This document shows, piece after piece, positions 1,837 to 59,344 of a DNA stretch of 64,000 nt. The DNA is taken from assembly GCA_001179505.1 (NCBI GenBank), contig CDMY01000298.1, positions 66,613 through 130,612 of the forward strand, read 5' to 3'. Positions within the stretch are counted from its first letter, which is position 1. The number at the start of each line of letters is the position of its first letter. The DNA comes from Vitrella brassicaformis CCMP3155. Its lineage: Eukaryota > Protista > Chromerida. The translations under genes and the position numbers were made by a program. The notes beneath the pieces are model-generated. The model was not told where the DNA came from and searched no databases. It saw nothing but the letters and a program-made list of their open reading frames with translations.

Positions 1837-3216
1837 GTCAGTGTGAGTGGATAACAGCAGTGGCATCCGTTGCGTAAGGCAGGCGGAGTTGGCTTTTTTT
1901 GCCTCGTCTGACTAACTTGATTGACCGTCGGCAGTACTGTCTTTGACAATTGCGTGCCTCATCAAGTACCGACCGTCTTCGTTGGTTGACCTTGACTGTC
2001 TCTTGCTCTCGGGGTGATTCTTGGGCTTGTCGTGATGTTGGTGCGTCATGCCTGGACTGCGCACGACCCACCATCCTGAGGGAAAGGGACAGAATCGCCC
2101 CAGGGCAGAGGTGCGTTCGATGGGCGGGTGAGGTGCACCACATCGCTGCCCGCCACGTGGTGGATCCTTTCGATGGTGAGTGTATTGGATGGAGGTATGT
2201 GCGTAACTGACAACTGCCTGCGTCGCTTGGACCGGTCTCTGTCCACCCATCACACACACCGACAGACACCGACGCATCGCATGCATCAGATACACTCAGT
2301 CTTGTCTCCCTCGGTGTCTCTCTCTGTCACTCACTCCCCTCCCGCGCCCCTGGTTCTCATCCACCATCCATCTCTGCAGCGAATCATCACAATTGAAGAC
2401 ATCTCCAGTGACACGCACAACAATCCTGTCCGATTGGCCTTTGCCCCCCTGGCTGGGGTTTGTGTGTGTCACTGAGCAGTCCATAAACAGAGGACGACGA
2501 CACGAACGCTCAGACGGCCACGTCAACAGACAGCGGGTTCTTTTCATTGACGAGTGAGTGGGGCTGTGCGGCGGCATCTCTGTGCGTGGCGGGAGGGGCC
2601 GGGCGTCTCAGTCGGCCCATTTGTGTGTGTGAGCAATTGACTAGGTGAGCTCAGTCGGTCACTTGAAGCTTTGGCTGGGGGGCTCTCTCGGTCTGCACAA
2701 TGACTTCACTCGATGCCTGCAGGTCCGCCACCCGCGGCACACACATAGACAGACACGGTCCACCACACAATCACTGAGCATGGCCAGTGAGTCAGCCAGG
2801 CAGCCACACGCAGTCGCACATCGGCCGGAGCAGCACATCAAAATCGGCCAGCAGGCAGGCAGCCGGCTATGAGGACGGGCGGATATCTCCTCATGGGAGA
2901 GCTGCCTGCCTGCCTGCTGGAGGGAGAGCCCCACAGAGAAGATGGACGCACGGGCAAAAAGGCCAAGCCATAGACCGACAGAACTGACGCACCCATCAGA
3001 GGCACGCCAGCGAGCCATACAGCCATCTGGTCACACACACACACAGCCATTCGGTCACTCATCGGCCACTCTGTCTGTCTGTCTACAGAGTGAGAGGTAT
3101 GCGATGTCTCTTGAGCACACACAGGTCGGCTACAGACATGACGACAGCCGGCTTCCGCTCTCCTCCTCAGCTACGCCACCCTCACCTGTCGAATGCACAG
3201 GAGACACACACACGGG

Positions 3217-3366
3217 TCATGCAGGCCAGCTGGAGGACCTCTTTGATATGTGGGACTGTGTACATCCGCCGCCCTCATCCACATCGTCACTCTCATCACC
3301 ATCACTGTCGGAATCTGCAGACCACACACAGAGAGAGAATGCACGTCATCCATCCATCCATCCATC

Positions 3367-38580: not shown

Positions 38581-41431
38581 TTATCCCCAGGTGTCGCATA
38601 TGTATCGCCTCTTGGCCTGCAGCTGCAGCAGGAAGCGGTTGGCGTCCTCCTTGCTCATCCCGCCATGCACACCCAGCACCTCCACAAAGGCGTCCCACAC
38701 CTGCGAGGGCATCGGGTGCGCCCGGCCGCACACGTACACCACCGCCCCTCGCCGCAGCAGCAGATCCACCACATCGCCGCCCCGCCTCTCAATCAAGTCC
38801 TGCACGTACTCCTTCCTATAGGGGTCTGTGCGCGAGAAGGCCACCTCGACATCGAGCCACCCCGAGTAGCGGCCCCACTCGGCCTCATACAGGTAGTCCT
38901 TCTCGCGGTGACGGAAGCCGAGGAACAGCATGTCTCGAGGGCTCTTGTGGGGCGGGCTGGTCGACGGATGGTGAAGGTCGCCATTCGCCGGCTGCTGGGC
39001 AGCAGACTGGTGGTCATTGTCTCTAGTGGTGCGGGAGGTCGCTGTGCGGCTGTGCAGCTCCAGCACTGACACACGAAGGCGAGAGCAGGCCATGGTGTTT
39101 TGGTGGTGGCTGTCTGGGTTGCGTACATTGCAGGTGTCTGTATTGTATGACGGCTCTGCATGGCGCCAGGCCAGTGCCCGGGCAGACCATAATGAGCGGC
39201 ACCGACAGCTCAGGAACGCGCTGGATGCCACCGCTCCGCTCAATGCCCACAGGAATCCAATCGCCCGCCTGAACACACACACGCCGCACACACGCACCCA
39301 CTGACTAGACCGTCACCAGAACGTGACACGCGCAGAAGGGGCATCGCGGCATGGCTCACTCACCTTGAGTCGTCGAAAGAATTGGCTGCAGAGACCCACA
39401 ATGTGGCGATCATACCCAGTGGTGTACTCGACCATCGCCGCACAGAGGTCGAGGTCCACAAACCCACCTGCTCCTTCACTCCTGACACCGTCATGGCTAC
39501 CAGCACCTCCGCCGATGACACCAATGCACGGCGCAGGAGGGGGCGGCAGGCGGCTGGCCGTCAGCTTGGTGATGTGCAGGGGCAGAGCCATGCCGCCGCC
39601 TGTGGGTGGGGTGGTCAGGGGGGTCCGCAGCTGCGGCATACTCGACAGCGCCAGAGCTCGCCAGACATCCTTGCGATACCTGATCCATCAACAGACAGTC
39701 TCAGATGGGGATAGACGGATGTGAGTGTGTGTGCTGACCATTGCGGTGCAGATGCGACCGAGTATTTGCGCGGCAGTATGGGTGGGATCATGCTCAGCAG
39801 GTGGTCGAGGGGCGGCGATGCGCTCCCAAAGTCCCACAGGACCTCAGCGAAGGTCCGCCGCTCTGTCTTGCAGTACTCATAGTACTCCTCCTTCGCTTCC
39901 TGCACGCACACATCAACCCAAAGACCATCCGCCATCCACCCGTCCATCGGCCCCCTCTTTGTTTGGCCACCAGTGTGCGTGCGGCGAATTCGCGCAGTTT
40001 CTCGCAGTGCTGTTGGTCAGTGGAGAAGAACGAGAGGTAGTGAAAGAAGAATCGTGGCGGCACCGCTGTGATGTCCAGGTAAAGTGTAAAGACGTCACGG
40101 ATGGAGAGGGAGGTGGGGGGAGGGGGGAAGGGGTTGCGCCGGTCCAGGGCTGCCGTGGGCGTGATCTGGATCACTTGGTTGGGGTTCAACTTCTGGTGCT
40201 CCAGGAAAGAATCGACCAGCCTGACAGGCAGACAGAGAGAGAGACAGAGAGAGAGAGAGAGCGGATTGAGCAGTTCTATGAGCATTTTTTGAGCAGTTTT
40301 GCATCGCTTTGTGGGGAATGTGGGGCATACGTTGGGTCGATGGAAGGCCATACGATGGCCACATCTCCAGGCACATAAATGGTATCGTTCCTCTCAGACG
40401 AATCGCAGCTCAACTGAACGAACAAACACACTCAACTGAACAAACATACCATCCCGTCTCCCCTGCCTCCCTCCTCTCCCGCTCACTCACCCTCAGGTGC
40501 AGATTCTGCACGTCCTGGAAATGGCTCTCCTCTGTCAGGCGCCTCAGATCCATGACCTGTGTCCACCGGATCCTCTCGCCGCCCCGGCCATCATTCTCAT
40601 GCGCGAAGGGAAACTTGAAGTGCCCATGCGACGATGAGGATGACGCCGATGACGACGTGCCACTCCTGGCCCCCGTGGAGACCACGCGTGAGCGATACAT
40701 CGGCTCGGGCATGGAATCGTCTGGGAGGATGGTGAGGCCGTCGGGGATGGGGTGGATGGCGAGGAGGGCCTCCCAGAGCCCCTCCATCCAGGGGTCCAAC
40801 TCGCCCTCAAAGCCAAAGTCGTGCTGGTCGTCACCCAGACCTATCCTGCAAGAACGAACAAAAGCAGACATCACTTTGGGCCACATAGCTGGTCGCTTCG
40901 TCCGCGCTGACCTGTAGAATTCGTGTGCCCCCAGCTGCAGAAGCCTCTTGTGCAGCCGCCTTGCCGCATAGTTGAACTGCCGATAGTGCGAGTCGCCCAG
41001 ACCAAACACAGAGAACCTGACAGGTGCCAATACCCATGCACACCATCACCACACATAAGAGCGGCCGTGGCTGACTGACTCACCTGATGTTTCTGAGGAG
41101 GTTGGGCGGATGGCTGCCTCTCCTCAGGTACGTCCAGAACTTGCGCATGTTGTCAGGCGCATCACCCTGACCTGCAGACAGACATGCACACCAGGCAGAC
41201 AGACAGACAGAAATCACCGGCTGATCTCTCCCTTCACTCATACGCACCAGTAGTGGATGTGACGAACACAACGGTGATCTCGTGTCGGCAGCTCTCATAG
41301 TCAAAGTTATCCATGGGCAGCAGGCGGCACTCGAACCGTCGTCGACGGCCTTCGCGTGCCAGGTCTGCCGCCACCTCAGCCGCACAGCCCGTCTGGCTGC
41401 CGTACAGAATCAACAGACGGCGCGCATCCAT
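38581..41431 (-). CDS. NDOR1: NADPH-dependent diflavin oxidoreductase 1 (Tah18 ortholog, cytosolic Fe-S assembly)
   Basis: Flavodoxin motifs LILYGSQTGCAAEVA, VVFVTSTTG-QGDAPDNMRKFW, FSVFGLGDSHY..FNYAARRLHKRL, IGLGDDQH; FAD/NADPH motifs PRKYSVAS, GLCSQF, LIMVCPGTGLAPCRA, LFLGFRHREKDYLY, AFSR, VYVCG; ends YICDTWG*. Confidence 0.95.
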
Positions 41432-41578
41432 TCTCACACCAGACCCAAAGGCCGCTCCTCTAAGCTCGCAGAGGACGGCTGGGAAGAAGGGCCACGGAGG
41501 CATTGGCATCTTTCCTGTTGGGCTGTCAATCATCTGCTGAGTGGGAAATGCTTTGATCTTTTCCTTCATCTTCCGTCT

Positions 41579-44500
41579 CGATTGACGAAGCCACTGGGGC
41601 AGTGGGCCCGGCTCGTCCAGCCGCAGGGCCGAAGGGTCAGATCTGTCCGCGATGAGCGGTCGGGGCGACGCGCCAAAGGCGCCCGCGTCATCGGGTACAC
41701 CAGTCATGAAAAGATCCGTCCGCAGACTCACACAAACACATGAAATGTGCCATACTCTCTGTGGCTGCTGTGTGCTGTCACCAGGTGCCAGTGACGTCAT
41801 GCGTGAGCTTCCCAGGACAACCGCTGGAGGCCCAGGGCGAATGGCATCCACCGCACCCCAGACACCCCACGCACACGGCAGCCCATCGCCAGCTGGTATT
41901 CCTGGGCAGTCGCCGCCCCCACAGGATCCCCCGCAGCCCACCAACCAGCCGTCCCCCGACCCCCGCACACCTCAGAACCATCGCGGCACCATCGAGTCTG
42001 GCGGTCCCTCTGGTGGAGGTCAGGGAGTCGAGAGCGGTGGGGCGTGTGGCGAGGGCGATGGTCGAGGAGCGGCAGCAGGGGTCGCCGCGGCCGCGGCAGC
42101 AGACCTCTCACTCTCAAGTGGTAAGCCGTACCGACTCGTAGATGTCCGTCATCGCGGTGTGTGTTGTTGTTGACTTCAGTGACCGACAAGGATGAAGAGG
42201 ATGCCCAGGGTGATGAAGAGGGTGGTGCTGGTGGTGGTGGTAGTGGTGAAGGGAAACAGGAGGACCGTCGCATCGTCCTTGCCCGCCAGAAGGCCATGAA
42301 GGGCAAGCACGGTGGCGACGGCGATGAGGAATACACGCCCGGCGAAGATGGTATTCACTGTACACCATGACCTGTCTTGTGTGGTTCATGGTGGACTCAT
42401 GTGTCTGTCATGCAGATCTGGCTGAGCATCAGGAGCTCGCCATCGAGGAGAAGGAGCAGGGTGAGCAGGAGGACGGTGTACCTGCTGCCGCTGCTGCTGC
42501 TGGTGGTGCCAGTGTTGTGCCGGCCGCCGCTGCTGCTGCAGGGGTCAGGCGGATGACCACCTCTGCGCCTCCTGCAGACAGCACTACGAGATGACCGCAA
42601 CCAAGAAGCGGTACAGCAGAAGCATCTTCGCCCGCCTCCGCCAGTCCCACCCGGACGTGCAGCTCACCTTCACACCCATCCCCCACCAAACCCCCGACCA
42701 AGACGCCGTGACCGTCACCATGGGCCCCTTCACCGACAGCAACGGCGAGGCCTTTTACGTGCCGGAGGTCGTGACCCGTTCGGCACGCAAGAGGAAGAGC
42801 CTTATGGGCTGGTACTTTAACACCCTTTGCCAGAAGGCCAAGAGGGCGATTGAAGACCCTCCCGACCACCACGATTACTTCGACGAGGACGAGGATGGCA
42901 CAAGAGTGTTCGTCCAGCGAAGTAAGTGGCTGGCTGGCTTCCACACACACACAACCGGAAGCATGGCGGGCGGGTTCCGCCTGTATGTGTGTGTCGCAGG
43001 GGTCAAGCCGAAGGCCAAGGCCAAGGCCAACAACGTCAGGCGACGGGCGCCAGCAGGTGGGACACCCACCCAAAGAGACCGTTTGGACTGCACGAGACCT
43101 TCTGGTTGCGTAAATGGGTGAATGCAGTGGCTGAGGAGATGGGCGACGGCGAGCAGCAGCAAGTGGACGAACATGCGATGGCGGCTGCTGCCGCGAATGG
43201 GCCGCCCTTCCCCTGGCATCCCATGTGGCCCTTCGACCATCCGCCTCCCCCGTTCTGGCCACCACCGCCATACTTCTACGGTGCGCTCGGACACACGAAC
43301 AGACGGCCGAAGTGATGCACAGATGCATATTTCTCTCGATGGCTGCATGTTGGGGACAGATCACGGCGGCATTGCTGTGGAAGGCCCCCCATTGCCGCCA
43401 GGAGTCACAACGGGCCATACATCCAACCAGGTGATTGCATGAGTGAGTGGACAGCGCCCAGCGATCCTTTACGTCTTGTTGTGTTTCCATTTCCGTCAAG
43501 TGTTCGTCCCCCGGCGAACTCGGCTGCACCGCCGCATCGCCCTCCCCCTGTGCCCCCGCCACCACCAGCTGCCGCCCCCATGGCTCTCCAGCCGGCTGCA
43601 GGCGGCCCCACAACCCCTGTGTCGGCTGCTGAGGACGCACCGATGGATGACGCCACCAACCAGATGCCCCAGGGCGAGGCTGTGCTCTTTCCACAGCAGC
43701 CGCAGCCACAGCCACTAGCGGCCGATGAGGACCAGCAGCACGACGATGACGCCGTGCCCGACGCGCAGCACGATCCCCAGCACCAGCAGCCGCAAGAGGA
43801 TCCGCAGATGAACGGCAACCAGGACGAGCAACCAGAGGCACGCGACCACCGGCAGCAGCACGAGGATGACGCGATGCATGACAGGCAGCAGCAGCAGCAG
43901 CAGCAACAACAAGAGGGTCGACAGGTCGATGGCACAGCACATGCCGCCGCAGCACCATCACCCGCACCACAGGCACCGTCGAGCCGTCCACCAAACGGTG
44001 AAGACAGGCCTGCAACCGTGCCTAGTGGGGACGAGTCACCGCCCCAGGCGGCCGCTGTGTCGACCAGGGATGAGGGAGGGCAGCCGGGCGGCAATCGGCC
44101 AGACCAAGGAGGGGGGCAGGGCGGGGAGGCGGCCGCTGCTCGTGTCCGTGGCCGAGTCAAGACTGAGGCCGGCGCAGGGGCAGCCACGGGCGGTGGGGGT
44201 GCCAACCAACAGCAGCAAGGTGCCCCCAAGGCCAGAGCCCGGAGGCCGCCGCAGAGGAAGCAGAGTGTGCCTGCTGGGTATCTGGAGCGTCAGCTGGTCA
44301 ACCTCGACCACCAGCAGCTGGTTAAAGCGCTGGAGCGGGATGAGAGCGAGCTGGCAAGAAGCGTGCTGCAGATCGTCAGAAAGGTATGTGGGGGCAGACA
44401 GGCAGACAGAGAAACAGACAGACGGCTAGATGTTTGTGTGTGTCATCTCTCTGCAGAGTGGCTTTAAGGGGTCTCAATAGCAGAAGATGATGGGCAAGAC

Positions 44501-44790
44501 GGCGCCCCAGATCAACACCGAATTTCTGGGGAACACCGTCGGACAGGCACTCGACCTCTCCGACTGGGTACACAAGATATACAATGAGCACAACGTAAGT
44601 CAAACAGCCCTCAAGTCGACCGTCTCAGCGTGTGCGTGTGCGTGTGCGTGTGCGTGTGTGTCGGTGTCGGTGTCGGTGTGTCGGTGTGCCTTGCACACGC
44701 AGGGCCGCCTGTGGGTGCCCAAGGCACTGCCTGTCATCAAGCAGGAGCAAGACGACGCAGCAGACCCGCCTCCGGGTGCGCACATGCTGC
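41579..44790 (+). repeat. Left arm of a diverged inverted duplication of about 3.3 kb
   Basis: Homologous to the reverse complement of 50530-53938, from GATTGACGAAGC about 70 bp upstream of the ATG through the same series of exons and introns. Confidence 0.9.
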
Positions 44791-46480
44791 TAACGGCACG
44801 CTCACCACGAGGGCTGACACACATACACACACACACACTGTGGTGATGTGCTGTGTGTGATTTCACTCACCCAGACGTCCCACGTCCAGCAGCAGGCTCT
44901 GTTGACCGCTCTCGTTCCCCCCGTGGCCGCGTGTTGCAATCTGCCGACAGAGCCAGAGGCCACCGTCACCGTAGCCGTGACAACGACCATGACGATGAGG
45001 ATGAGGGCGGCCGCTCCACAGAGCGGCCAAGGGGGAGAGAGTACGCCTACCGCCCAGACAGATCACATGATCCAGACACCCACCCATCCTGGCTGCTGGC
45101 CTGTCTGTCTGTCTGTCTGTTTGTTTGTCTGTCGGTCTGTTCATCAGCCGTCGTCGCTCGCGCTCACGTGACCGCTACCGACACGAGGTAAGTGAGCTGC
45201 CGGCTGACCTGCCTGCTTCATGATCGCCGAGTAATCGTACTTGTGTGTGTGTGTGTGGGATGGATGGATCGGTGCAGGATCGTCGCAGTCGCAGCCCGGG
45301 TCGCGGACATCGATACGAGGGCCCACGTGAGCACACAACACACACACCGCACCGAACCACACTGTGCTGCCTGATGCCATATGTATATGATCTGTCTGGT
45401 GCATGCCTGCATTCAGTGCCCCCTCCTGCGTCGCGTGTGGCGGGCCACCGGGGCCGCAGCGGCCGCCGACCGCACTCTCCCCATGACGACTACAGACGGG
45501 ATGACCGACAATCACACCGACAGGTGTGTGCCTGGGAAGGCGGGCACCACACACAAGTAACTGCCATTCCCTCACGGCATACTTGCATCCATCAGGGCTA
45601 TGCGGGCCGGCGCTCTCCTCCTCCCCGCCGCCGACTGTCGCCTCGTCCCTTCTCACGTGGACGGCGGGCGCGGTCAGACCGATCGGACAGCGCTGGCAGA
45701 GATGGGTGAGATGTCTGACTCTTGATTCGACATGGACACAACGTGTGGTGGTCAGATGTCGATGAGCACTTGCCTGCGTGCTATGGTGTGTGTCAGGCCG
45801 CCTTTTGGCCGGCCGCATGGCCCCCCCTCACCTCGACGCCCACCTCATCCCTGGTCGCCGTCGCCCCGTCGCTGCAATCGGTCACGCTCACGCTCGCCGA
45901 TTCCGCGAGCCAGGAGCCCACCGAATGAGAAGGCAACAGACACAGTAGGCAGCAAACACCACACACAACCATGCGACCTCATTGGTGGTCTCTGTCTGTC
46001 TGTCTTGTGTGTGTGACATCGCTGCAGATAGTGGTTGAGGGGTGGTCCCCCCATGACCCTCTATGCCAACTGGAGAAACTGGCCACAGAGGTACGTGTGT
46101 AGGCACCCCCCCCCCCGCTTGTGTGTTAATTGTCTGTCTGTCTGTCTGTCTGTCTGCCCACATGGACAGGGGCTGCCTGCAAGCTGCAATCCTCCTTTGG
46201 ATGTCCGCCGAGAAGCGGGGGAGAGCGATGCGGTTCAGAGGCTGTGCTTCATTCAGTTCAGCACCGTCGACGAAGCCAGTGAGTTCCTCGAGGTGAGCTT
46301 GCAGAAACGAGTGGGTCGACAAATCCGTGCACGCATTCTCTCTCGCTCATATGTCTGTGCCAGGCGCACCGTGTCAACGCGCCGTGCCGCCATGGGCTGG
46401 TGCGGGGCGAGGAGTTCTACCCCTTGCAGTACTCGAGGCGCAACTCATCCAAACCCAAGAACAGTCTGGATGTCGCGTGA
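41652..46480 (+). pseudogene. Paralog A: unknown domain + SAM-like domain + RS-rich region + RBM5/10-like RRM; disabled by a frameshift and a nonsense codon
   Basis: Same exon structure as paralog B. G-run at 42541-42544 has 4 G versus 5 in B (frameshift); in-frame TAG at 44478-44480. Downstream exons stay in phase: DRRRSRSRDRYRHE...ATDTIVVEGWSP...LCFIQFSTVDEASEFLE...YPLQYSRR...SLDVA*. Confidence 0.7.
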
Positions 46481-46600
46481 AGGACAGAAGATGGGTGGAT
46501 GCGTGCGTGATGTCGGGGGGCATTGATGGGGCGTGCAGGGGGGCTGTGGTCTCCATTCCACCCGGCACGGTTTTTGCAGCAGGTCATGTTTCACGAGCCC

Positions 46601-47030
46601 CGTGGCTGAATCGGGAGTGGGTGAGTGATGGGAGAGAGGGAGGGAGGGAGGGTGGTGCGACCAAAGGGTGTCTGTCTTTAGCCAGTAGGTCTGCGGACGC
46701 ACAGGGCTCAGACCTACTCGGCTGGCGCATGAGTGGGCACGTGTGTGGATGTGTGTTTTTGTATGTGCGCCGTCGTGGGCTGATGCGGCACGAGTACTTC
46801 TTCCGCAGCTCCACAATGTCGCGTGTGAGTTGCGTGACTGACAAGATGCAACACAGCTGCATAGTGCAGGCCATGCATTTTCCAACCACGTTCTTGCCAT
46901 CGCCCGCACGTGGCTGATTTGGGAGTGAGTGGGTGATGGGAGAGACGGAGGGAGGGAGGGAGGCAGGGAGGGAGGGAGGGTGATCCAAGGGGGTCTGTCT
47001 TTCCTTAGCCAGTAAGTAGGTCTGCAGAGG
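46601..47030. repeat. Local imperfect direct duplication of about 100 bp
   Basis: cgtggctga..gggagtg..gtgatgggagaga(ggga)n..ccaa.gg..tctgtcttt..agccagta..ggtctgc occurs at about 46601-46697 and again at about 46910-47030. Confidence 0.7.
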
Positions 47031-48813
47031 CATACGGCGTGGACATGCTCAGCGAGTGCATGCGTGTGTGTGTGTGAGTGTATTTGTATATCTAAATGCG
47101 TTCCTTCCTGTCTTGGCTGGCGGCTTTATATGCAGCATGTCAGCATGTTAGTCAGAATGGCTGTCTCACTGTGTGTGTATGTGTGTATGGTGTGCCTTGA
47201 TGCGAACGACCCTCACAGACAGGTGTGCGTGTATGCCCAAAGGTAAGGTACGGTAGCCTGACGAGTGAGAGAGAGTGCCGGCGTGGGTGTGTGGGTGTGT
47301 GCATGTGGCCTCACCCACCCCCCAACCCACCCGCTGTCCGGTCTTTGCCAACGAGTGGAAAGTGTATTTGTATCTATTGCGTCACGTGTGCAATGTGTGT
47401 GTGTGTGTGTGCGTCTAATCGCCTTTGGGTGATCTACATCTGGCTCCTGCTATCGCTGTGACCTTTCTTTTGTATCAAGGCGTCGGACGGGACGGGCTGC
47501 GAGAGAACGTGCACTCATCTGTTGTCGAGCAGTGAGGGGCCATGACGCATTCGTGGACTGGACCGCTGGATCATTCCACCGGCCACCCATGAATCTGCTG
47601 AGCCTTGCTGTGCGCCAGATGTGTGCCTTATTGTATGTGTGTATGTAGCGTCTTGATGCCAGTTGTTGCTGCTCCCAAGGGATCCCAGTTTGTGTGGCGA
47701 GGCGAGAGAGCCAGGGAGAGACAGTGCGGGTGGAGGGGCGTGCGTGTCGGGCTGCAAGGAATATTTGTGTATGTTGCGTGATATGTGTGCATGTGAATTT
47801 AAGGGCTGTGACGTACCTTCTGTGTCGTTATGATGAAGGTGTGGCGCGGCCTGCGGTGCGGTAGTGGCCTTGTGTGAGAGTGAGTGAGTCAATCAATCTT
47901 TTTTGGAACCAACAGACGTGAGGGGCTGGATGGACAGACAGATGGACTGATCCATCCATCGCGCCATGAGTGTATTTGTGAGTTCGATTGTCCGTCCTAC
48001 TCAAAACAGTGAGTCCATCAGTTGAGCGGTCACTCACTGTCTGGCACACATGAGCCCTCATCACGCCATCCGATGTCCTTCCTCGACGCCGAAAAGCCCT
48101 TAAATCTATGGCACACATGCACACAGATGCACTGACTGCATGAGAGTGAGGCGCCCCAGAGAGCTCACGCACCCACCCCCGCCCGCACTCACTCTCTCTT
48201 CGTGTCACTCAGACGCCACCGCACCGTCAGAAAGCCCTTCAATGCACACATACGGCACACGTACGTCACGCAATAAAAGACAAATACACCGGAGAGTCAG
48301 TGGGTGGGACCACATGCACACCGACGCCCGCACCCTCTCTCTCTCTCTCTCTCTCCCTTCCCCCCTTTGGACAGCGGTTGATACGTATACATGTGTGTAC
48401 ACCTACCTGTCTGTGAGAGTCATTGCATCCTGCCAGGCCAGGTGTGTACACCCCACCCCGCATACACAAACGATGAATCGAGCGATGAGTGAGAGGTGCT
48501 TACATACATATTAACATGCAGACACTATGCTGTATATGAAGCACCTCCGGTCAACACACACACACACATGCACATGCACACATGCGCAAGATAGAAGACA
48601 CTGTTGAAGGGCACAACGCAGGCAGAGAAATACGCACAATGCGAATCTCTTCAACTCACTATGTCCCCCTGCCCTCCGACACACGCTGTCGCATGAGCCA
48701 AGAATCGGGCTCGCATCACATTTGATCCGTCTACACCAAATCTGTTCACAAGAACTCCCTCCCTCCCTCCCTCTACCTCCCTGTCTGTCTACTGCCGCCC
48801 GCTAGTGTGTCGC

Positions 48814-51800
48814 TCAATAGGGGGCCGCTCGATACGAGCCATCACTAATACCACCCCAGTAGTGCTGATTGCTGTCCCTCTGTGGTCCATAGCACGATGC
48901 TGCTGCTGCTGCCGCCGCCGCTGCTGCGGGTGAAGGCAGCAGCGGCGGCAGTAGAGTGGGTGTGTGTTGGTGTAGATGGGGGGAATGATGGTTGGGGTGA
49001 GTCAACGGGCGGGCGCTGGCCACCATCACAGACACAGACAGGACAGAGACAGACAGCACGGAGTGGGTCGCGTGGCGCCGCACATTCATGTAGTCAGCTT
49101 GTCTCCTTCCTCACTCACCTGGGACAAGCACCTGTGGCCACTTGTGGGTGTGTTGGGCCGTGGCCACCTGGCACACACACCCACACCACACCGACACACA
49201 CATAAGACATACCAACACAACGCGACATCAAGAGATACTCTACGTACCTGGATTGCCTCCCCCTATGGGTTTGGGGGCGTCCATCGAATGGCCAGCCCCA
49301 CCCGCCTTGACGCCACCAGGAACGGCCACCTTGCACTGAACCTGACACACACGAAATGTCCCCGTCTGTCTGTTGAGAGAGGGAGCGAAAGACCAAACAG
49401 ACGCAGCGTCTGACCTGCTTGCAATTGATCCAGTGCGACTGCTGGCTGAGCACCCTCTGCATGGTAGACTTTTCATGGAATACGACGAAGCCAAATCCCC
49501 GCGGACGGCCTGAACACACACACACACACGGACACACACGGACACACACGGACACACACACACACACATACACACAGAGAGAGAGAGAGAGAGAGTCAGC
49601 ACCAACCAGTGTGGCTGTGGCTGTGGCTCTCGCACACCGACCGGTAATTGGGTCCGTGACGAGAAACGCATTGCGCACGGGGCCATAGTTCGCAAAGTAC
49701 GCACGGAATTGGGCTGAAAGAATGAACGAAGACAACGACAGAGACAGATGGATGAGTCGCTGCCCACCCACCACTCCCGCGGGCCCTCTTACCCGCTGTG
49801 AGTCCGTGCGGCAGTCCGCCGACAAACATCTTGTTGTTGTTGGCCTCCTCACCAGATGAAGATGCAGCAGGGGCCGCGACTGCATCCATCGTCTGAGCGA
49901 GCGTGACCCACTGATGGGGCGGAGAAAGTGATTCGCTTTGCCGGGACAGTGCGCTGCCGGCTCCAGCGAGCTGGCCCAAACTGTGCATACACACGCCCGA
50001 AGTACAGTACACCTAACTCGTCCATTACACACTCACTTGGGTGGTGGTGGCTGCTCGTGGAAGCCGTTGGTGAAGGAAGGCGGATGTGGTACTTGTAGCT
50101 GGCTCGTGTTGCCTCCTGCTGCTACTACTGCTGCTGCTGCCGCCGCTGGAGGGGTTGGAGATGAGAACATGGCCGCGCCCGGCGATTCAGGTGGTGCCGG
50201 TGGTGGGTAGTTCGGTGGACCACCTGCACATGGGACGGACCACCCGCACCACACGCGCCAAAAATGAGTGGTTGTCGACGCTCTATGGGTTATATAAATC
50301 GGCTTCCCATCTACTCACCGACGGGAGCAGCAGGCGGCGGCGGGTACCCGAAGATGGGCTGAGTGCCATAGCTAGGATGGCCATGTGGGTGTGGGTACGG
50401 CTGCACTTGGGCGTGGCTGTCGTCTGCCGGTGCTGCAGGGGGCGATGAGGGCGGGGGAGGGGGCGGGCCGTCTGAACGAACGAGGCACACCAAACACACT
50501 GTGACAATCCGCCGGCTGGTGCGTGTGTGAGTGCCCTTTTGCGCACCTTGATTTGGGTCATCTTGGTCTTGCTCAGGCTCCTCGGTGGGCTCCTCCTTGG
50601 TAGGAATGGGCACCCACACCAAGCCCTGCACGTGCACAAGACACGCACACACGTATTCGGCTGAGTGAGTGAGTGAGTGAGTGAGGGCGTCGGTTACCCT
50701 TTGGTTGTCGTAGATGTGTTTGAGCCAGTTGCAGAGGTCGATCGCCTGCCCCAGGTTGCCGAGGTATTCGGTGTTGATTTGACTCGCCGTCTTGCCACTC
50801 ATCTGGTGCAGATGATATCCCTTGAGCCCACTCTGAGGAATCGTATACATACAAAGACATCCATTCATCGACCACCCCCCCTGTCTGTCTGTTTCTGTGT
50901 CTGCCTGTCTGCCCCCACATACCTTTTTGACGATCTGCAGCACGCTTCTTGCCAGCTCGCTCTCATCCCGCTCCAGCGCTTCAACCAGCTGCTGGTGGTC
51001 GAGGTTGACCAGCTGACGCTCCACACACCCAACAGGCTTCTTCTGCGGCTGCCGACCAGCTCTGGCCTTGGGGGCACCTTGCTGCTGTTGGTTGGCACCC
51101 CCACCACCCCTGGCGGCCTCTGCGCCGCCCTCAGTCTTGACGCGGACACCGACACGAGCAGCGGCCGCCAGCCCTCCCTGCCCCCCTCCTTGGCCTGGCC
51201 GGTTACCGCCCGGTTGCTCTCCGCCATCCCTGGTCGACACAGCGGCCGCCTGGGGCGGCTCGGCCCCACCGCCCCTCTCCTCAGTCGGCTGCTGCTGCTG
51301 CTGGCCGTCATCGATGACGACTGGCTCTCGCTGCTGCTGATTGCAACCTTCACCAGCAGCAGCCGACCCACGTGAGGCGCCCGAGCCTCCGTTGCCAGGC
51401 GGACGGCTCGATGGTGCCGGCGGTGTGGGTGACGCGGGTGGTGGTAGTGGTGCTCCTGCGGCGGCAGCATGTGCTTGTGCGGGGGACTCAGATGGGTGTC
51501 GTTTCACTCGTTTCTTGGGTGGTGATTTGGGTAGCGGGCGGCTGTCCCTGTCCCTGTCCCTGTCCTTGTCCTTGTCCTTGTCTTTCTTCTTGCCGCCCTC
51601 CTTGTCCTTGTCCCTGTCTTTCTTGTTCTTCTTCTGTTTGCCGTTCTTCTTAATTGACATGCCCGCCCTGACGTCCTCCTTCAAACTTTCCCCCGGTGAC
51701 GATGCCACATCGCTGTCAGGGGGCACATGCTTGCGCTTCTTGCCCCTCGTCCTTGGACTCGCAGCGGCGGCCGGCGCCTCCTGCTCGCCTTCCCTCTCGT

Positions 51801-53873
51801 CTTCCTCGAGAACGTTGATGTGATGACGCCTGCCTTTCCGCTCTGCAATACTGCTGCTCGCCCGGTCCAGGACAGAGCGGGGGGATGAGCCCGGCAGGGC
51901 GGCCGCGGCTGGGGGGCCGGCCTTGGCCAATGACGGACGCGCAACAGTGGTAGCAGCAGCGGCGGTGGCAGCAGCTGGTGGCGGTGCGACATGGGGAGGG
52001 CGATGCGGCTGTGCAGCCGAGTGCGCCGGGGGCCGCACACCTGACGGAAATGGCAACACGACAAGGCATGAAGGACGCCCCGACACGTACACTCGTTGAC
52101 TCATTTTCACCTGGGTGGATGAATGGCCCGTTGTGACTCCCTGGCGGCAGTGGGGGGCCGCCGTGATCTGTCCGCACCATACATTCATCGAGACGAGTAC
52201 GGGTGTCTTTGAGGCCAGCTATCTGTTCGTGTGTCCAAGCGCACCGTAGAAGTATGGTGGCGGTGGCCAGAACGGGGGAGGCTGATGGCCGTAGGGCCAC
52301 ATGGGAGGGAAGGGCGGCCCATTCGCGGCAGCACCCGCCATCGCATGCTCGTCCTCTTGCTGCTGCTCCCCGTCGCCCATCTCCTCAGCCACTGCATCCA
52401 CCCGATGCATCAGTACAGAAGCCGTCATTGCGTTGCTCCACAGGCTCACTGACTGACCTGCTGCTGGAACCGACGATCGCCTGGCGCCGTTGGCTTTGGC
52501 CGTCGTCTTCGGCTTCGCCTTGGCGACTGCGACACACGCACAGACACGCACACAACCGGAGTTGGCCAAAACTCTGCCGGCCATGCGCTCCGGTGTGTGT
52601 ATGGAAGCCAGCCGGCCAGCCAGCAAGTCACTTACTGCGCTTGACGAACACTCTCGTGCCATCCTCCCCTGTGGTGAACTCATCGCGGTTGTTGTCGGGA
52701 GGGCCCTTGAGCGCCTCCTTGGCCTTCTCCCGGAGCGGAACGAAGGTCCAGCCCATGCGGCTGTTCCTCTTGTTTGCCGGGCGGCTCACGTCGTCTCGCA
52801 GGTAGTAGCCCTCGCCCTTGCTGTCGGCAAAGGGGCCGATGGTGACGGTCACAGTGTCTTGGTAGGGGCCTTGGTGGGGGTGGGTGAAGGCGGGCTGCAC
52901 GTTTGGGTGGGACTGGCGGAGGAGGGCGAAGTAGCTTGTATGGTAGTTGGTTGCGACTTCCTCGTAGTGCTGTCTGCAGGAGGCGCAGAGGTCGCCATCT
53001 GCCTGACCCCCTGCAGCAGCAGCGGCCGGTGCAGCAGCGGCTGGCGAGGCTGGTGTGTCATCCGGCTGCTGCTCCTCGATGGCGAGCTCTCGATGCTCAG
53101 CCAGATCTGCATGACAGACACATAAGTCCACCATGAACCACACAAGACACGTCTGTCTGCGATCATGGGCATACAGTGAATACCATTTTCTCGGCCGGGT
53201 GTGTATTTTTCATCATCGCCGTCGCCACCGTGCCGCGCCTTCTTGCGGGCGGCAGGGACGGCGCGGCTGTCTTCACCCTCACCCTGGACATCCTCCTCCT
53301 CATCATCGTCGTCCTCATCGCTCACTGAAGGAATGAAGGGACCAAACAACAACATCCCTTAGACATTCACGTGATGTGATGCGTGTGAGGGCCGGCTTCG
53401 GTGCAGCTTACCGCTTTCGCCGGAGAGGTCAGACTCTGCTGCCGCGGCAGCGGCAGCGGCGACCCCTGCAGCCCACCAAGCAGCCGTCCCCCGACACCCA
53501 CCCGCCCCACCGCTCTCGACCCCCTGACCTCCACCAGAGGGACCGCCAGACTCGATGGCGCCGCCAGGGGCGGGGGACGGCTGGTTGGTGGGCTGCGAGG
53601 AGTGCTGTGGGGGTGGTGACGGTCCAGCGACGGCTGGCGATGGGCTGCCGTGTGGCTGCGGTGTCTGTGGTGCGGTGGATGCCATTCGCCCTGGGCCTCG
53701 TGTGGCCGTCCTGGTGAGCTCACGCTTGACGTCACTGGCACCTGCTGACAGCACACAGGAGCCACAGAGAGTGTGGCACATTCATGTGTTTGTGTGAGTC
53801 TGCGGACGGATCTTTTCGCATGCGGTGTACCTGATGACGCGACTGGTCTTGGCGCGTCGCCCCGACTGCTCAT
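48814..53873 (-). CDS. Paralog B: unknown domain + SAM-like domain + Pro-rich linker + hnRNP A/Musashi-type RRM; appears intact
   Basis: ATG at 53873. The apparent stop at 50311 lies inside a GTGAGT donor, and phase-1 splicing joins GGPPNYPPPAP..., then the RRM (KMFVGGLP; RPRGFGFVVF; VQCKVAVP) and a Tyr/Gly tail ending YRAAPY* at 48814. Confidence 0.75.
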
Positions 53874-53938
53874 AGTGGTCAGGTCTGCCCCTTCAGGCCT
53901 TCAGCTGGACGAGCCCGGGGTTCATAGCTTCGTCAATC
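50530..53938 (-). repeat. Right arm of the inverted duplication (homologous to 41579-44790)
   Basis: Matching exon and intron sequence on the opposite strand, e.g. DLAEHRELAIEE versus DLAEHQELAIEE and ERQLVNLDHQQLV in both. Confidence 0.9.
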
Positions 53939-54193
53939 GGGTGGCGCCAACGAGGCAAAGAATCGACGGCAATGGCAAGACCCGCACACCCTCGTCAAAA
54001 GAGAGACCAACACGGCCGCCACTGGCCCCTTTCCTCAGGCACGCTTGGTTTCAAGCTCGCAGAATAGCGATCGCCGTCGTCAGCCGTCAAGAGAGCACGT
54101 TTTGGAGATAGATCTGATCCACGACCCTCTGCATCGTCTGGATCACAAGCCTTCGGTCCTCTCATCCCATCATCCCACCTTCGCCACGCACTC

Positions 54194-54516
54194 ATGTCGT
54201 GGGTGGCGTACGGTGCGGAGCTGCTGCTCGCAGAGCCAAAGGGCAAGCAGGCGCCTGCCCCGGCGCCGATCCCACCGCCCGAGAGCGGCGGGGGAGAGGA
54301 GGGGAAGGGCGGGTTCATCAACAACGACGACGACGCCATCTATGTGGTGTATGCGGAGATTGCACTGTTCCTGCTGGTGGCCTTCCTCAACATGCAGCTC
54401 CTCTCGATTTTCCGCGTGAGTCCCTCGAGGGATCAGGGGCAACCTGTGTCTCTCACGGGCGGCAAGACACGCAACTTCTTCGTTTCACTGCTGTTTCTCG
54501 CCAACTTCTGTGAGCA

Positions 54517-54548
<32 letters not shown>

Positions 54549-55442
54549 TTGGTGGGCATGCTCCTGATTTGTGGGTGTGTTCTTTGTCTCTCTGTGCAGT
54601 TCGTGCGTTTTCGCTGGGTCTTCAGCTGGTGTTGATGAGCAGCATCTCGCAGGCGTCGCTGATGACGTGGTTCACCTACCTGTTCCGCTCCCTGCCCTCG
54701 CTGATCTTCCTCTCGACCTACTCGGTGCTCATCTACTTCTGGGCGCAGGTCTACCAGGCGGCCACCCTCGTCTCCACACCCCTCCTGCGGCCGACCTTCA
54801 TATTTGTCAACATCGCCGTCTACTGCATCTATGCCGTCATCACGGTGCTGACGCTGCTGCTGCACGCGTATGAGGAGTATCGCACCTACAGCATATTCCT
54901 CATCGGCGTCATCTACCTTGCCGTGTCGGTCGGATTCTTCGTCTACGGAATGAAGGTCAGTCTGTCTGTTACTCACGGAGGGAGGGAGGGAGGATTGTGT
55001 GTGTGGGTGGCGTGGCACCATGGCCTTTTTCTGTCTGTCTGNNNNNNNNNNNNNNNNNNNNNNNNNNNNNNNNNNNNNNNNNNNNNNNNNNNNNNNNNNN
55101 NNNNNNNNNNNNNNNNNNNNNNNNNNNNNNNNNNNNNNNNNNNNNNNNNNNNNNNNNNNNNNNNNNNNNNNNNNNNNNNNNNNNNNNNNNNNNNNNNNNN
55201 NNNNNNNNNNNNNNNNNNNNNNNNNNNNNNNNNNNNNNNNNNNNNNNNNNNNNNNNNNNNNNNNNNNNNNNNNNNNNNNNNNNNNNNNNNNNNNNNNNNN
55301 NNNNNNNNNNNNNNNNNNNNNNNNNNNNNNNNNNNNNNNNNACCGTGCTAAGGATGGGGGCACCCATGTAGTGCCTGCCGAGGCTGCACTGAGGCCTGCT
55401 GCTGACGACGGTGAAACGCCCAAGCCCAAAGGCCATCGGTGA
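54194..55442 (+). CDS. THH1/TOM1/TOM3-domain (DUF1084-type) multi-pass membrane protein, copy 1; middle exons hidden in the gap
   Basis: Multiple hydrophobic helices; LPSLIFLSTYSVLIYFWAQVY matches the plant TOM1/TOM3 motif LPGLLFFSTYTLLVLFWAEIY as recalled. Last exon DRAKDGG...PKGHR* follows the gap. Confidence 0.8.
55042..55341. other. Assembly gap (300 N)
   Basis: Run of N; the round length indicates a placeholder. Confidence 1.
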
Positions 55443-56790: not shown

Positions 56791-59344
56791 GTGGGTGTGT
56801 TCTTTGTCTCTCTGTGCAGTTCGTGCCTTTTCGCTGGGTCTTCAGCTGGTGTTGATGAGCAGCATCTCGCAGGCGTCGCTGATGACGTGGTTCACCTACC
56901 TGTTCCGCTCCCTGCCCTCGCTGATCTTCCTCTCGACCTACTCGGTGCTCATCTACTTCTGGGCGCAGGTCTACCAGGCGGCCACCCTCGTCTCCACACC
57001 CCTCCTGCGGCCGACCTTCATATTTGTCAACATCGCCGTCTACTGCATCTATGCCGTCATCACGGTGCTGACGCTGCTGCTGCACGCGTATGAGGAGTAT
57101 CGCACCTACAGCATATTCCTCATCGGCGTCATCTATCTCGCCGTGTCGGTCGGATTCTTCGTCTACGGAATGAAGGTCAGTCTGTCTGTTACTCACGGAG
57201 GGAGGGAGGGAGGATTGTGTGTGTGGGTGGCGTGGCACCATGGCCTTTTTCTGTCTGTCTGGGTGCTTGCATTCAGGTGTCCGGGCAGCTGTCTGATAGG
57301 AGCCGGCAGCTGCACCGCAAGAACTTCATCATAAGGAGGGTCAGTGACCTCTCACACAGGGCACACAGACGCGCGACACACGCAAGGATGTGTCTGTGTT
57401 CACGTTGATGCGTCGGTGTAGGTGATGGCGCTGAGTGTGGCGTGTCCGATAATCTTCTCCCTGCGGGGCTTCTACTGCCTGGCCTTCTCGTTCGGCTTCA
57501 TCAGCAAGTACTACCCCCAGGGCATCTCGCGGTTCATATGGGACGCCATTGTGAGCACACAGACACACAGACTCACACACAGCAGACCACCAGCACACAG
57601 TGAATGACCCATCGCTATTCACCCTCATGTGTGTGGTGCGTGTGTTGGTGTGTCGGTCAGATCTACATGACGTCCGAGTGGGTGCCCTCTCTGCTGATGC
57701 TATTCTTCTTCTGGCCACGAAGGAGCCACCAGCTGCCACCAAGGGTCAGCACACATCACATCAAATCACACCACTCACACCACTCAAACCATACCCATCT
57801 GTGCCCTGAACACCAATCAGGTTGAGAATTCCGACGTCTCAGCCCCTCTGGTGCGCTCCAACTACCCCCAGGCCGGCGCCCGGGCCTCCCAGCCCCTCCC
57901 TGCCCCCTCCGCTGCCCGCACCGTCAGGCAGCCCCGAGCCACCTATGACGGCCGCATGGGCGACTACCAGCCGTTGCCGCAACAACAGGCCNNNNNNNNN
58001 NNNNNNNNNNNNNNNNNNNNNNNNNNNNNNNNNNNNNNNNNNNNNNNNNNNNNNNNNNNNNNNNNNNNNNNNNNNNNNNNNNNNNNNNNNNNNNNNNNNN
58101 NNNNNNNNNNNNNNNNNNNNNNNNNNNNNNNNNNNNNNNNNNNNNNNNNNNNNNNNNNNNNNNNNNNNNNNNNNNNNNNNNNNNNNNNNNNNNNNNNNNN
58201 NNNNNNNNNNNNNNNNNNNNNNNNNNNNNNNNNNNNNNNNNNNNNNNNNNNNNNNNNNNNNNNNNNNNNNNNNNNNNNNNNNNNNNNNNNNTCTGTCTGT
58301 TACTCACGGAGGGAGGGAGGGAGGATTGTGTGTGTGGGTGGCGTGGCACCATGGCCTTTTTCTGTCTGTCTGTGTGCTTGCATTCAGGTGTCCGGGCAGC
58401 TGTCTGATAGGAGCCGGCAGCTGCACCGCAAGAACTTCATCATAAGGAGGGTCAGTGAGCTCGCCCGACACACGACACACGACACCCGCAAGGACGTGTC
58501 TGTGTTCACGTTGATGCGTCGGTGTAGGTGATGGCGCTGAGTGTGGCGTGTCCGATAATCTTCTCCCTGCGGGGCTTCTACTGCCTGGCCTTCTCGTTCG
58601 GCTTCATCAGCAAGTACTACCCCCAGGGCATCTCGCGGTTCATATGGGACGCCATTGTGAGCACACAGACACACAGACTCACACACAACAGACCACCAGC
58701 ACACAGTGAATGACCCATCGCTATTCACCCTCGTGTGTGTGGTGCACCCACCGGTGTGTCTGTCAGATCTACATGACGTCCGAGTGGGTGCCCTCTCTGC
58801 TGATGCTATTCTTCTTCTGGCCACGAAGGAGCCACCAGCTGCCACCAAGGGTCAGCACACATCACATCAAATCACACCACTCACACCACTCAAACCATAC
58901 CCATCTGTGCCCTGAACACCAATCAGGTTGAGAATTCCGACGTCTCAGCCCCTCTGGTGCGCTCCAACTACCCCCAGGCCGGCGCCCGGGCCTCCCAGCC
59001 CCTCCCTGCCCCCTCCGCTGCCCGCACCGTCAGGCAGCCCCGAGCCACCTATGACGGCCGCATGGGCGACTACCAGCCGTTGCCGCAACAACAGGCCTAT
59101 GGTGGGGGCGTGGGGCGGCACGGCGACATGGCTGGAGGCGCGCCGCACATCGATGTGTGGGTAAGTCAGAGGGGAGGGCGGTGGAAGTGGGTGTACATGT
59201 ATCTGGTCCGTGTGTTTGTGTGTGTCTGTGTGTGTGGTGCAGGACCGTGCTAAGGATGGGGGCACCCATGTAGTGCCTGCCGAGGCTGCACTGAGGCCTG
59301 CTGCTGACGACGGTGAAACGCCCAAGCCCAAAGGCCATCGGTGA
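56791..59344 (+). CDS. THH1/TOM1/TOM3-domain membrane protein, copy 2 (lacks exon 1; exons 3-6 appear twice across the gap)
   Basis: 54571-55041 matches 56791-57260; 57181-57991 matches 58292-59097; 55342-55858 matches 59244-59760. Stop TGA at 59342-59344. Confidence 0.65.
57992..58291. other. Assembly gap (300 N)
   Basis: Run of N, flanked by overlapping near-identical sequence. Confidence 1.

What the first reader, a model, noticed from the sequence alone, without database searches (positions are those of the whole stretch)
41579..53938. Inverted tail-to-tail paralog pair: shared unknown + SAM-like N-terminal module fused to two different RRM types
Seen: two diverged copies with the same exon structure on opposite strands (41.6-44.8 kb and 50.5-53.9 kb). 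In each, phase-consistent splicing continues into an RRM, but the RRMs are unlike each other. Copy A leads into an RS-rich region and an RBM5/10-like RRM (IVVEGW...LCFIQF). Copy B leads into an hnRNP A/Musashi-like RRM (MFVGGL...RGFGFVVF). The shared segment NLDHQQLV[EK]ALER...SG[LF]KG..L...M...LGN.GQA[IL]DL..W resembles the SAM pattern (helix 1, EIDG-like turn, LG.LG..KI helix 5). Inference: a mobile SAM-containing N-terminal module was duplicated and captured different RNA-binding C-termini, giving an undescribed SAM+RRM family that could polymerise on RNA.
Basis: partly seen in the sequence, partly recalled or inferred. Interest (0 to 1): 0.8.

Follow-up and report, generated by a model that had tools for sequence, protein, structure and literature searches.

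The report
Vitrella SAM-like plus RRM gene pair
Two neighbouring genes on opposite strands in the alga Vitrella brassicaformis share a duplicated front half, including a small helical domain predicted to fold like a SAM protein-interaction domain, but end in two different RNA-binding domains; this is a species-restricted family of moderate interest, and one of the two copies looks damaged.

Summary
The inverted duplication is real: 41607-44567 matches 53919-50725 at 74-89% nucleotide identity. It lies in Vitrella brassicaformis and belongs to a family found only there, with at least 5 loci.

- **Ancestral layout.** Unknown N-domain, ~70-residue helical module, RS-rich linker, then 1-3 very divergent RRMs. 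Copy A and the loci on C228 and C649 have it.
- **Copy B.** It is the odd one out. The same front half sits upstream of a canonical hnRNP A/D/Musashi-type RRM.
- **Evidence for the B fusion.** It rests on phase-consistent GT..AG sites, conserved in a 91%-identical environmental ortholog where exon indels are all multiples of 3. RNA contigs cover only the RRM exons and one upstream proline-rich exon. No read joins the module to the RRM.
- **Copy A is damaged as assembled.** It has a 1-base frameshift in a G-run (42541-42544) and an in-frame TAG (44478-44480) inside the module.

Polymerisation is untested. The scan's earlier notes hold only this same stretch. Interest is moderate.

The parts
41607..44775 (+). 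Arm A of the inverted duplication: 5' region, N-terminal exons, module exons and the 'GRLWVP' exon of copy A
   Evidence: blastn and inverted-repeat hits at 74-89% identity. Protein-level homology runs to the shared GTGCGC donor at 44776.
50547..53919 (-). Arm B of the inverted duplication (copy B front half)
41745..42350 (+). Copy A putative exons 1 (41745-42120, 'MCHTLCG...') and 2 (42180-42350, acidic). This is inferred and has no RNA support.
   Evidence: Open frames, the GTAAGC donor and the acceptors are conserved with B. Length differences are multiples of 3 and the phase is the same.
42416..42921 (+). Copy A exon carrying the unknown N-domain. A -1 frameshift at G-run 42541-42544 relative to B makes the upstream frame stop at 42592-42594.
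   Evidence: The anchor distance is 143 nt (mod 3 = 2) in A and 114 nt (mod 3 = 0) in B. The N-domain is aligned.
43664..44383 (+). First exon of the public model P0001. Its last 38 codons (44270-44383) are module exon 1, 'PAGYLERQLVNLDHQQLVKALERDESELARSVLQIVRK'.
44457..44594 (+). Copy A module exon 2. The ancestral acceptor gives SGFKGSQ* with TAG at 44478-44480. The public model starts at 44481 (QKMMGKT...).
44703..44775 (+). Copy A 'GRLWVPKALPVIKQEQDD' exon, the last exon shared with B
44875..45944 (+). Copy A RS/RD-rich linker exons of the public model (six exons)
   Evidence: A similar RS stretch follows the module at C228.
46028..46480 (+). Copy A divergent RRM in three exons: 46028-46090, 46170-46292 and 46364-46480 (includes the stop)
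   Evidence: Exon map. A family profile hits only RRM proteins in the PDB: nucleolin E 2.5e-4, RBM5 0.35, RBM10 1.3. There is no Pfam hit.
53184..53781 (-). Copy B putative exons 1 (53781-53412) and 2 (53324-53184). This is inferred.
52636..53106 (-). Copy B exon with an intact unknown N-domain, in frame with its upstream part
50923..52188 (-). Copy B long open exon (low-complexity K/D/E-, P- and Q-rich). It ends in module exon 1 (51036-50923).
   Evidence: It is part of a 625-codon stop-free frame.
50698..50832 (-). Copy B module exon 2, intact: 'SGLKGYHLHQMSGKTASQINTEYLGNLGQAIDLCNWLKHIYDNQR'
50547..50625 (-). Copy B 'GLVWVPIPTKEE...' exon, the last exon shared with A
50037..50471 (-). Copy B proline-rich linker: e4 (50471-50319), a 95-nt intron (50318-50224) and e5 (50223-50037). 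If the intron is retained, the frame stops at TAG 50313-50311.
   Evidence: Phases are. The donor GTGAGT and the acceptor AG are conserved in ortholog L024, which has a 17-nt indel in the intron and a 3-nt indel in the exon. RNA contig X1 record 2 covers 50040-50217.
48814..49980 (-). Copy B hnRNP A/D/Musashi-type RRM and C-terminal tail. Exons: 49980-49793, 49713-49642, 49509-49415, 49341-49248, 49167-49119 and 49015-48814 (stop at 48816-48814).
   Evidence: A spliced RNA contig (X1 record 1) has GT..AG joints on the minus strand. Pfam RRM_1. PDB matches. Frames.

Best explanation
The locus holds the two youngest members of a small gene family that, by sequence, exists only in Vitrella brassicaformis.

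**Ancestral protein.** It has five parts in order: a ~130-residue N-domain of unknown fold; long low-complexity spacers; a ~70-residue five-helix module that most likely has a SAM-like fold; an RS/RD-rich linker; and one to three highly divergent RRMs. I infer a nuclear RNA-binding protein. The RRM(s) and RS region would contact RNA and splicing or RNP partners. The SAM-like module would mediate protein-protein, possibly self, association. This mechanism is inferred, not shown.

**Origin of the pair.** The pair arose by an inverted partial duplication of the 5' two-thirds of such a gene. The breakpoint lies just after the 'GRLWVP' exon.
- Copy A keeps the ancestral RS + divergent RRM tail. As assembled, however, its front half has a frameshift and a premature TAG. 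It is therefore probably decaying, or makes only a shortened product like the public model P0001.
- Copy B keeps an intact front half. It is most likely spliced through two proline-rich exons to a pre-existing hnRNP A/D/Musashi-type RRM gene, which makes it a chimeric gene.
For: - **Duplication.**
- **Family and restriction.** Module copies sit at C298 (x2), C228, C461 and C649. N-domain copies sit at 7 or more loci. Among 1.84 billion representative proteins the only real hits are P0001 and P0003, both Vitrella.
- **Ancestral layout.** The A-type domain follows the module at three loci: A x1, C228 x3, C649 x2. P0003 joins the N-domain and the module in one public model.
- **A-type domain is an RRM.** All 11 PDB profile hits are RRM proteins. 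hhalign aligns the beta2-beta3-alpha2 segment.
- **B's RRM.** Pfam RRM_1; best PDB matches are hnRNP A2/B1, D0, A1 and Musashi. Its DNA has no paralog in the genome.
- **B fusion.** Junctions are phase-consistent. A 91%-identical ortholog contig keeps the same order, donor and acceptor. Its exon indels are 39, 3, 9, 3, 6, 3 and 15; its intron indels include 17, 1, 2, 14 and 4. An RNA contig fills exon e5 to within 2-6 nt of both predicted boundaries. B's long stop-free frames argue that selection still maintains them.
- **A lesions.**
Against: - No RNA contig from either RNA run lies on B's module or N-terminal exons (50373-53900). The module-to-RRM join in B therefore has no transcript evidence.
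- Copy A's junctions could not be tested with reads.
- The ESM Atlas structure search returned Rad51-N/HhH-type neighbours instead.
- dN/dS between A and B is only mildly below 1 in most blocks (0.26-0.76).
- Exons are no better conserved than introns between B and its ortholog (94.4% against 93.7%).
- The A frameshift sits in a homopolymer and could be an assembly error.
Confidence: 0.6

Rival explanations
1. Copy B is two separate genes: a front-half gene that ends at TAG 50313-50311, and an independent hnRNP-like RRM gene whose 5' UTR includes the proline-rich exon. The reading-frame continuity would then be coincidence.
For: RNA contigs cover only 48780-50217 and nothing upstream. An in-frame stop follows the e4 donor immediately if the intron is not removed. 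The RRM exon contains possible start codons ('MDAVAAP...', 'MFVGGL'). Word searches covering 168-1094 residues returned no public protein model for B, fused or not.
Against: The acceptor AG at 50224 is conserved in the ortholog although the adjacent sequence is rearranged, so e5 is an internal exon spliced to something upstream. The nearest conserved donor (GTGAGT at 50318) is phase-compatible. The gap between the stop and e5 is only about 90 nt. The drop in contig depth from 9 to 4.9 to none fits 3' bias.
Confidence: 0.25
2. The shared ~70-residue module is not a SAM domain. It would be another small helical domain, either a different member of the SAM-like/helix-hairpin-helix fold class such as Rad51-N type, or an unrelated bundle.
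Against: SAM and PNT domains dominate an unbiased ranking of 48,161 chains and align over their full length: 70/70, 75/75 and 67/69 residues. An independent weak phmmer hit to Scm SAM spans the whole module. The 'YLGN-LGQAIDLCNWL' helix aligns with Scm 'YMGLKLGPALKICNLV'.
Confidence: 0.35
3. Copy A as a whole is a pseudogene left over after the duplication. The public model P0001 would then be an annotation artefact stitched around its lesions.
For: There are two independent ORF-breaking differences in the front half. P0001 starts at an internal Met and uses the AG of the TAG as acceptor. dN/dS is relaxed in the N-domain (0.76).
Against: The downstream RS and RRM exons are open and in phase across 12 exons. 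A's RRM is 64-80% identical to those at C228 over the two larger exons. The frameshift is in a G homopolymer and may be an assembly error. A's expression was not tested.
Confidence: 0.3

Closest known systems
Bicaudal-C / BICC1 (KH domains + polymerising SAM)
   Different: BICC1 uses KH domains rather than RRMs, and its SAM is C-terminal and recognised by Pfam. Here the module is central, Pfam-negative and restricted to Vitrella. Polymerisation is untested.
Polycomb-group SAM domains (Scm, Sfmbt, Ph/PHC3, L3MBTL3, SAMD1)
   Different: They are chromatin proteins without RRMs. Identity is 10-16%. The polymer interface residues were not examined.
Smaug / Vts1 SAM (RNA-binding SAM)
   Different: In Smaug the SAM itself binds the RNA hairpin and no RRM is present. 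Nothing here shows that the module binds RNA.
RBM5 / RBM10 and nucleolin RRMs
   Same: The A-type domain profile hits nucleolin RBDs (E 2.5e-4), RBM5 (0.35-0.43) and RBM10 (1.3; E 1.8 as a single sequence). It is preceded by an RS/RD-rich region, as in splicing regulators.
   Different: There is no Pfam RRM_1 hit. RNP1 reads 'QRLCFIQF' and RNP2 reads 'IVVEGW', so they are degenerate. No zinc finger, OCRE or G-patch was found in the public model.
hnRNP A/B, hnRNP D, Musashi, Hrp1 (2xRRM hnRNP family)
   Same: B's RRM has the RNP2 'MFVGGL' and RNP1 'RGFGFVVF' motifs. Its best PDB matches are hnRNP A2/B1 (E 2e-5), D0, DL, A1 and Musashi. The nearest database proteins are plant hnRNP-like RRM proteins.
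   Different: It has a single RRM instead of two. It is probably preceded by about 1,000 residues of unrelated family sequence.

Membership tests
SAM domain (Pfam SAM_1/SAM_2 and relatives) | Significant match to a SAM sequence profile | tested here: not met
   Pfam gives no hit at E <= 10 for P0001, P0003 or the excised modules. The PDB profile search finds no SAM. The single best phmmer hit is Scm SAM at E 0.71.
SAM domain (Pfam SAM_1/SAM_2 and relatives) | A ~65-70-residue five-helix bundle with a long C-terminal helix | tested here: met
   The AlphaFold2 model me387031e14a8 has helices at 16-25, 30-42, 46-52, 57-64 and 69-87, with pLDDT 67. This is a prediction of modest confidence.
SAM domain (Pfam SAM_1/SAM_2 and relatives) | Close superposition on solved SAM domains, standing above unrelated folds | tested here: inconclusive
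SAM domain (Pfam SAM_1/SAM_2 and relatives) | Self-association or polymerisation through mid-loop and end-helix surfaces | not testable with these tools
   It needs SEC-MALS, EM or a crystal structure. The one complex-prediction job gave no verdict.
RRM (Pfam RRM_1), copy B | Profile match above the gathering score, plus RNP1 and RNP2 motifs | tested here: met
   RRM_1 scores 27.3 bits against a cutoff of 20.7 on a read-through ORF. The motifs 'MFVGGL' and 'RGFGFVVF' are present. PDB hits to hnRNP A2/B1 reach E 2e-5.
RRM (Pfam RRM_1), copy A type | Profile match above the gathering score | tested here: not met
   No Pfam family at E <= 10 for P0001:500-609.
RRM (Pfam RRM_1), copy A type | Remote homology to solved RRMs with the beta1-alpha1-beta2-beta3-alpha2-beta4 order | tested here: inconclusive
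   All 11 PDB profile hits are RRM proteins (best E 2.5e-4 for the whole chain; single-domain E 0.19-5). hhalign gives E 0.094 over beta2-alpha2. UniRef names P0001 'RRM domain-containing protein'.
RBM5/RBM10 subfamily | RRM-ZnF(RanBP2)-RRM-OCRE-ZnF-G-patch architecture | tested here: not met
   P0001 has no Pfam domain at all. It resembles the family only at RRM level, with E 0.35-1.8.

The most novel reading that the evidence does not exclude
Chromerids evolved a private family in which a SAM-like self-associating module, together with an unknown N-domain, serves as a common chassis. Onto it different nucleic-acid-binding ends were shuffled: arrays of 1-3 divergent RRMs, an hnRNP-type RRM (copy B), and an unidentified ~84-residue repeat at the C461 locus. 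The products would be polymer-forming RNA-binding proteins of a kind not described before, and copy B would be a caught-in-the-act example of exon shuffling by inverted partial duplication.
Probability: 0.2. Interest if true: 0.6.

Novelty: new variant of a known kind. Interest (0 to 1): 0.35.

Why it matters
If the module is a true SAM and the fusions are real, this is a domain combination I do not know from characterised proteins (that is from memory; one literature search found nothing relevant). BICC1 pairs KH domains with SAM, and Smaug uses SAM alone. The pair would also be a clear example of a chimeric gene made by a local inverted partial duplication in a relative of the apicomplexan parasites. 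The family is small, confined to one alga, unexpressed or weakly expressed in the data seen, and partly degenerate. Its wider significance is therefore limited unless the biochemistry (self-assembly on RNA) proves true.

Tried and rejected
- **Pfam.** Scans of all ORF pieces, P0001 and P0003 found nothing for the module, the N-domain or the A-type domain.
- **PWI domain.** I considered this from memory because of the '...QIN..FLGN...' helix. Pfam gave no PWI hit and no PWI domain appears in the listed structure matches, so I dropped it.
- **ESM Atlas searches.** The feature search on the module gave only sub-threshold leads (hnRNP_Q_AcD at 0.79). The search on the N-domain gave nothing usable.
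- **Single-sequence AlphaFold of copy A's shortened module.** pLDDT was 53, so I did not use the model.
- **Word-index protein searches.** Queries with B's 625-aa ORF, B's RRM ORF and P0003 did not return a public model for copy B. Low-complexity words saturated the candidate lists, and a fused model would exceed the length limits. B's public annotation therefore stays unknown.
- **Spurious hits.** P0002 (a repeat protein) and P0004 (an unrelated 2,231-residue repeat protein) were not pursued.
- **Complex prediction.** Two copies of the module gave no verdict, so this counts neither for nor against self-association.
- **C461 repeat.** I suspected from memory that the ~84-residue repeat is AP2-like. 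Pfam and a PDB profile search gave nothing.
- **N-domain profile against the PDB.** Noise only. The 'CxxC' is not invariant, so a zinc-finger reading is not supported.
- **Transposon origin.** Rejected. There are only 5-7 dispersed copies, each in a different gene context, with no terminal repeats.
- They were submitted exon by exon by reference. Only the public models P0001 and P0003 were used as spliced proteins.


Full report
**Organism and setting.** The window is contig C298:66613-130612 of a 72.7-Mb, 1064-contig assembly. Proteins encoded here are filed publicly under Vitrella brassicaformis CCMP3155. The DNA is about 60% G+C, with short introns rich in GT/CA repeats. The pair is flanked by a flavodoxin-domain gene on the left (minus strand, head-to-head with copy A). 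On the right is a THH1/TOM1/TOM3-domain gene (plus strand, head-to-head with copy B; expressed).

**The observation.** The inverted duplication is real and far beyond chance. Five collinear blastn blocks join 41607-44567 to 53919-50725 at 75-89% identity, the best with E 8e-142. Translated comparison and splice-site inspection show the same exon plan in both copies. The donors (GTAAGC, GTATTC, GTAAGT, GTATGT, GTGCGC) and acceptors sit at homologous places. Exon lengths differ only by multiples of three. Homology stops at the donor after the 'G[RL][LV]WVP...' exon (A 44775, B 50547). Beyond that the two genes are unrelated.

**Copy A.**
- The public protein P0001 (CEM00766.1, 609 aa, named 'RRM domain-containing protein') maps to 12 exons between 43664 and 46480. 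It joins the module, an RS/RD-rich region and the 'IVVEGW...LCFIQF...YPLQYSRRNS' domain.
- First, the module's second exon reads SGFKGSQ*QKMMGKT, with TAG at 44478-44480. The other four paralogs read SG[FL][KN]G[SY]HL there. P0001 avoids the stop by using the AG of that TAG as acceptor, which drops 8 codons.
- Second, the exon that carries the N-domain has GGGG at 42541-42544 where B has GGGGG. The upstream frame therefore runs into a stop at 42592-42594.
- P0001 starts at an internal Met, downstream of this frameshift.
- I could not test either lesion or A's splicing with reads, because the single reads call went to copy B. The homopolymer difference could be an assembly error.

**Copy B: structure.** All front-half frames are open, including a 625-codon stop-free stretch. 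Downstream I derived these exons:
- e3, 50625-50547
- e4, 50471-50319
- a 95-nt intron
- e5, 50223-50037
- the RRM exons, beginning at 49980

All junctions are GT..AG and in phase.

**Copy B: RNA evidence.** Run X1 is clearly RNA. One 745-nt contig is spliced with CT..AC joints on the plus strand. It covers 49980-49793, 49713-49642, 49508-49413, 49339-49246, 49165-49119 and 49015-48780. It carries 11 unaligned letters beyond 49980, where an AG acceptor sits. A second contig covers 50040-50217, which is almost exactly e5.
- The RRM, a ~95-residue tail and the proline-rich exon upstream are therefore transcribed.
- No RNA contig lies on the module or the N-terminal exons. The module-to-RRM join is thus not shown.
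- Contigs cannot prove absence. The depth falls from 9 to 4.9 to nothing towards the 5' end.

**Copy B: comparative evidence.** An ENA metagenome contig (L024, 2399 nt, 91% identical) is collinear with B from 51396 to 48896. It contains both the module exons and the RRM exons.
- Indels in predicted exons are 39, 3, 9, 3, 6, 3 and 15 nt. Indels in introns are 12, 12, 17, 1, 3, 2, 6, 14 and 4 nt.
- The intron between e4 and e5 has a 17-nt indel and rearranged sequence. Even so, the GTGAGT donor and the AG acceptor are kept, and e5 differs by one whole codon.
- That marks e5 as an internal coding exon spliced to an upstream donor.
- Overall, exon identity (94.4%) is no higher than intron identity (93.7%), so the signal is modest.
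- I put the fusion at about 0.7.

**The two RRMs.**
- B's exon 'RPRGFGFVVFHEKSTMQRVLSQQSHWINCKQ' best matches hnRNP A2/B1 (E 2e-5), D0, DL, A1, A/B, Hrp1 and Musashi. Pfam RRM_1 is above threshold. Its DNA has no paralog in the genome.
- A's domain gives no Pfam hit. A profile of its copies hits only RRM proteins in the PDB: nucleolin E 2.5e-4, RBM5 0.35, RBM10 1.3, hnRNP D0 and U1A. hhalign aligns beta2-beta3-alpha2.
- A's domain is therefore a very divergent RRM, and it is unrelated to B's at the sequence level.

**The family.**
- Own-genome searches find the module at five loci: A, B, C228, C461 and C649.
- They find the N-domain at seven or more loci.
- The A-type RRM follows the module three times at C228 and twice at C649.
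- P0003 (CEM28285.1, 772 aa, C649) joins the N-domain and the module in one public model.
- The ancestral layout is therefore N-domain, module, RS linker, divergent RRM(s). Copy B is the exception.
- An exhaustive HMMER scan of 1.84 billion representative proteins with A's module found only P0001 and P0003 as real relatives.
- A and B are each other's closest relatives: 2 differences in 32 residues of module exon 1.
- Synonymous divergence is mosaic: dS 0.13 around module exon 1 against 0.89 in exon 2. This suggests gene conversion between the arms.

**Is the module a SAM domain?**
- Sequence methods say nothing. There is no Pfam hit, no PDB profile hit and only one weak Scm-SAM phmmer hit, at E 0.71.
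- I built an AlphaFold2 model from an exon-wise alignment of the five paralogs, with P0003:548-640 as the first row. It has pLDDT 67, pTM 0.55 and five helices with a long last helix.
- Foldseek found nothing significant. Its best TM-score was to Scm SAM, 0.66 by target.
- My reading is 'SAM-like fold probable (about 0.6), SAM family membership unproven'.
- Self-association is untested. The complex job returned no verdict.

**Unknowns.**
- The N-domain matches nothing.
- At C461 the module is embedded among at least four, probably six, copies of an ~84-residue repeat that also matches nothing.

- The earlier-findings look-up returned only this same stretch and two unrelated notes.

**Verdict.** It is better told as one ancestral layout plus one chimeric derivative. 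This is a new variant of known kinds and of moderate interest.

Noticed in passing
L011 (G000:C461) 1829-3270 and 5553-6600: At the C461 paralog the module is flanked by at least four aligned, and probably six, copies of a conserved ~84-residue unit ('LDAY.K.RL.ELRRLNG..I.W....W.IQF....RT.EA.DKALEEA...RN.LA...G.PP.RSL'). Pfam and a PDB profile search find nothing. From memory the pattern looks AP2-like, but that is unsupported.
   Followed up: partly
L024 (ENA ERZ893784, contig k147_2558667, 2399 nt): An environmental metagenome contig is 91% identical to, and collinear with, copy B (51396-48896). A close relative of Vitrella brassicaformis is therefore present in that sample.
   Followed up: partly
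window 44025-44423 vs 44454-44594 (and the B counterparts): Divergence between the two arms is mosaic. dS is about 0.13 around module exon 1 and about 0.89 in module exon 2. This suggests gene conversion between the inverted copies.
   Followed up: partly
window 40410-41450 (-): A flavodoxin-domain gene (Pfam Flavodoxin_1, two exon pieces) lies head-to-head with copy A. It is probably a diflavin reductase.
   Followed up: partly
window 54081-55040 (+), with N gaps at 55042-55341 and 57992-58291: A THH1/TOM1/TOM3-domain membrane protein gene lies head-to-head with copy B. It is well covered by RNA contigs (word depth about 40). Two 300-N assembly gaps lie nearby.
   Followed up: partly
window 48755-48773 and 51286-51304: These are short, very high-copy simple sequences (DNA contig depth 160-210 against about 20 nearby). 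Many contigs from elsewhere in the genome attach there and produce false 'joints' in the DNA runs.
   Followed up: no
window 41653 (A) / 53873 (B): A conserved upstream ATG ('MSGRGDAPKAP' / 'MSSRGDAPRPV') is out of frame with the conserved 'MCHTLCG' ORF in B, because of a 1-nt indel. It is probably a uORF or 5' UTR sequence.
   Followed up: no
G000:C649:1695-2666, C499:335746-336141, C290:5758-6033, C1028:28944-29297: Further copies of the unknown N-domain occur here without a detected module nearby. The N-domain family is therefore larger than the module family.
   Followed up: no
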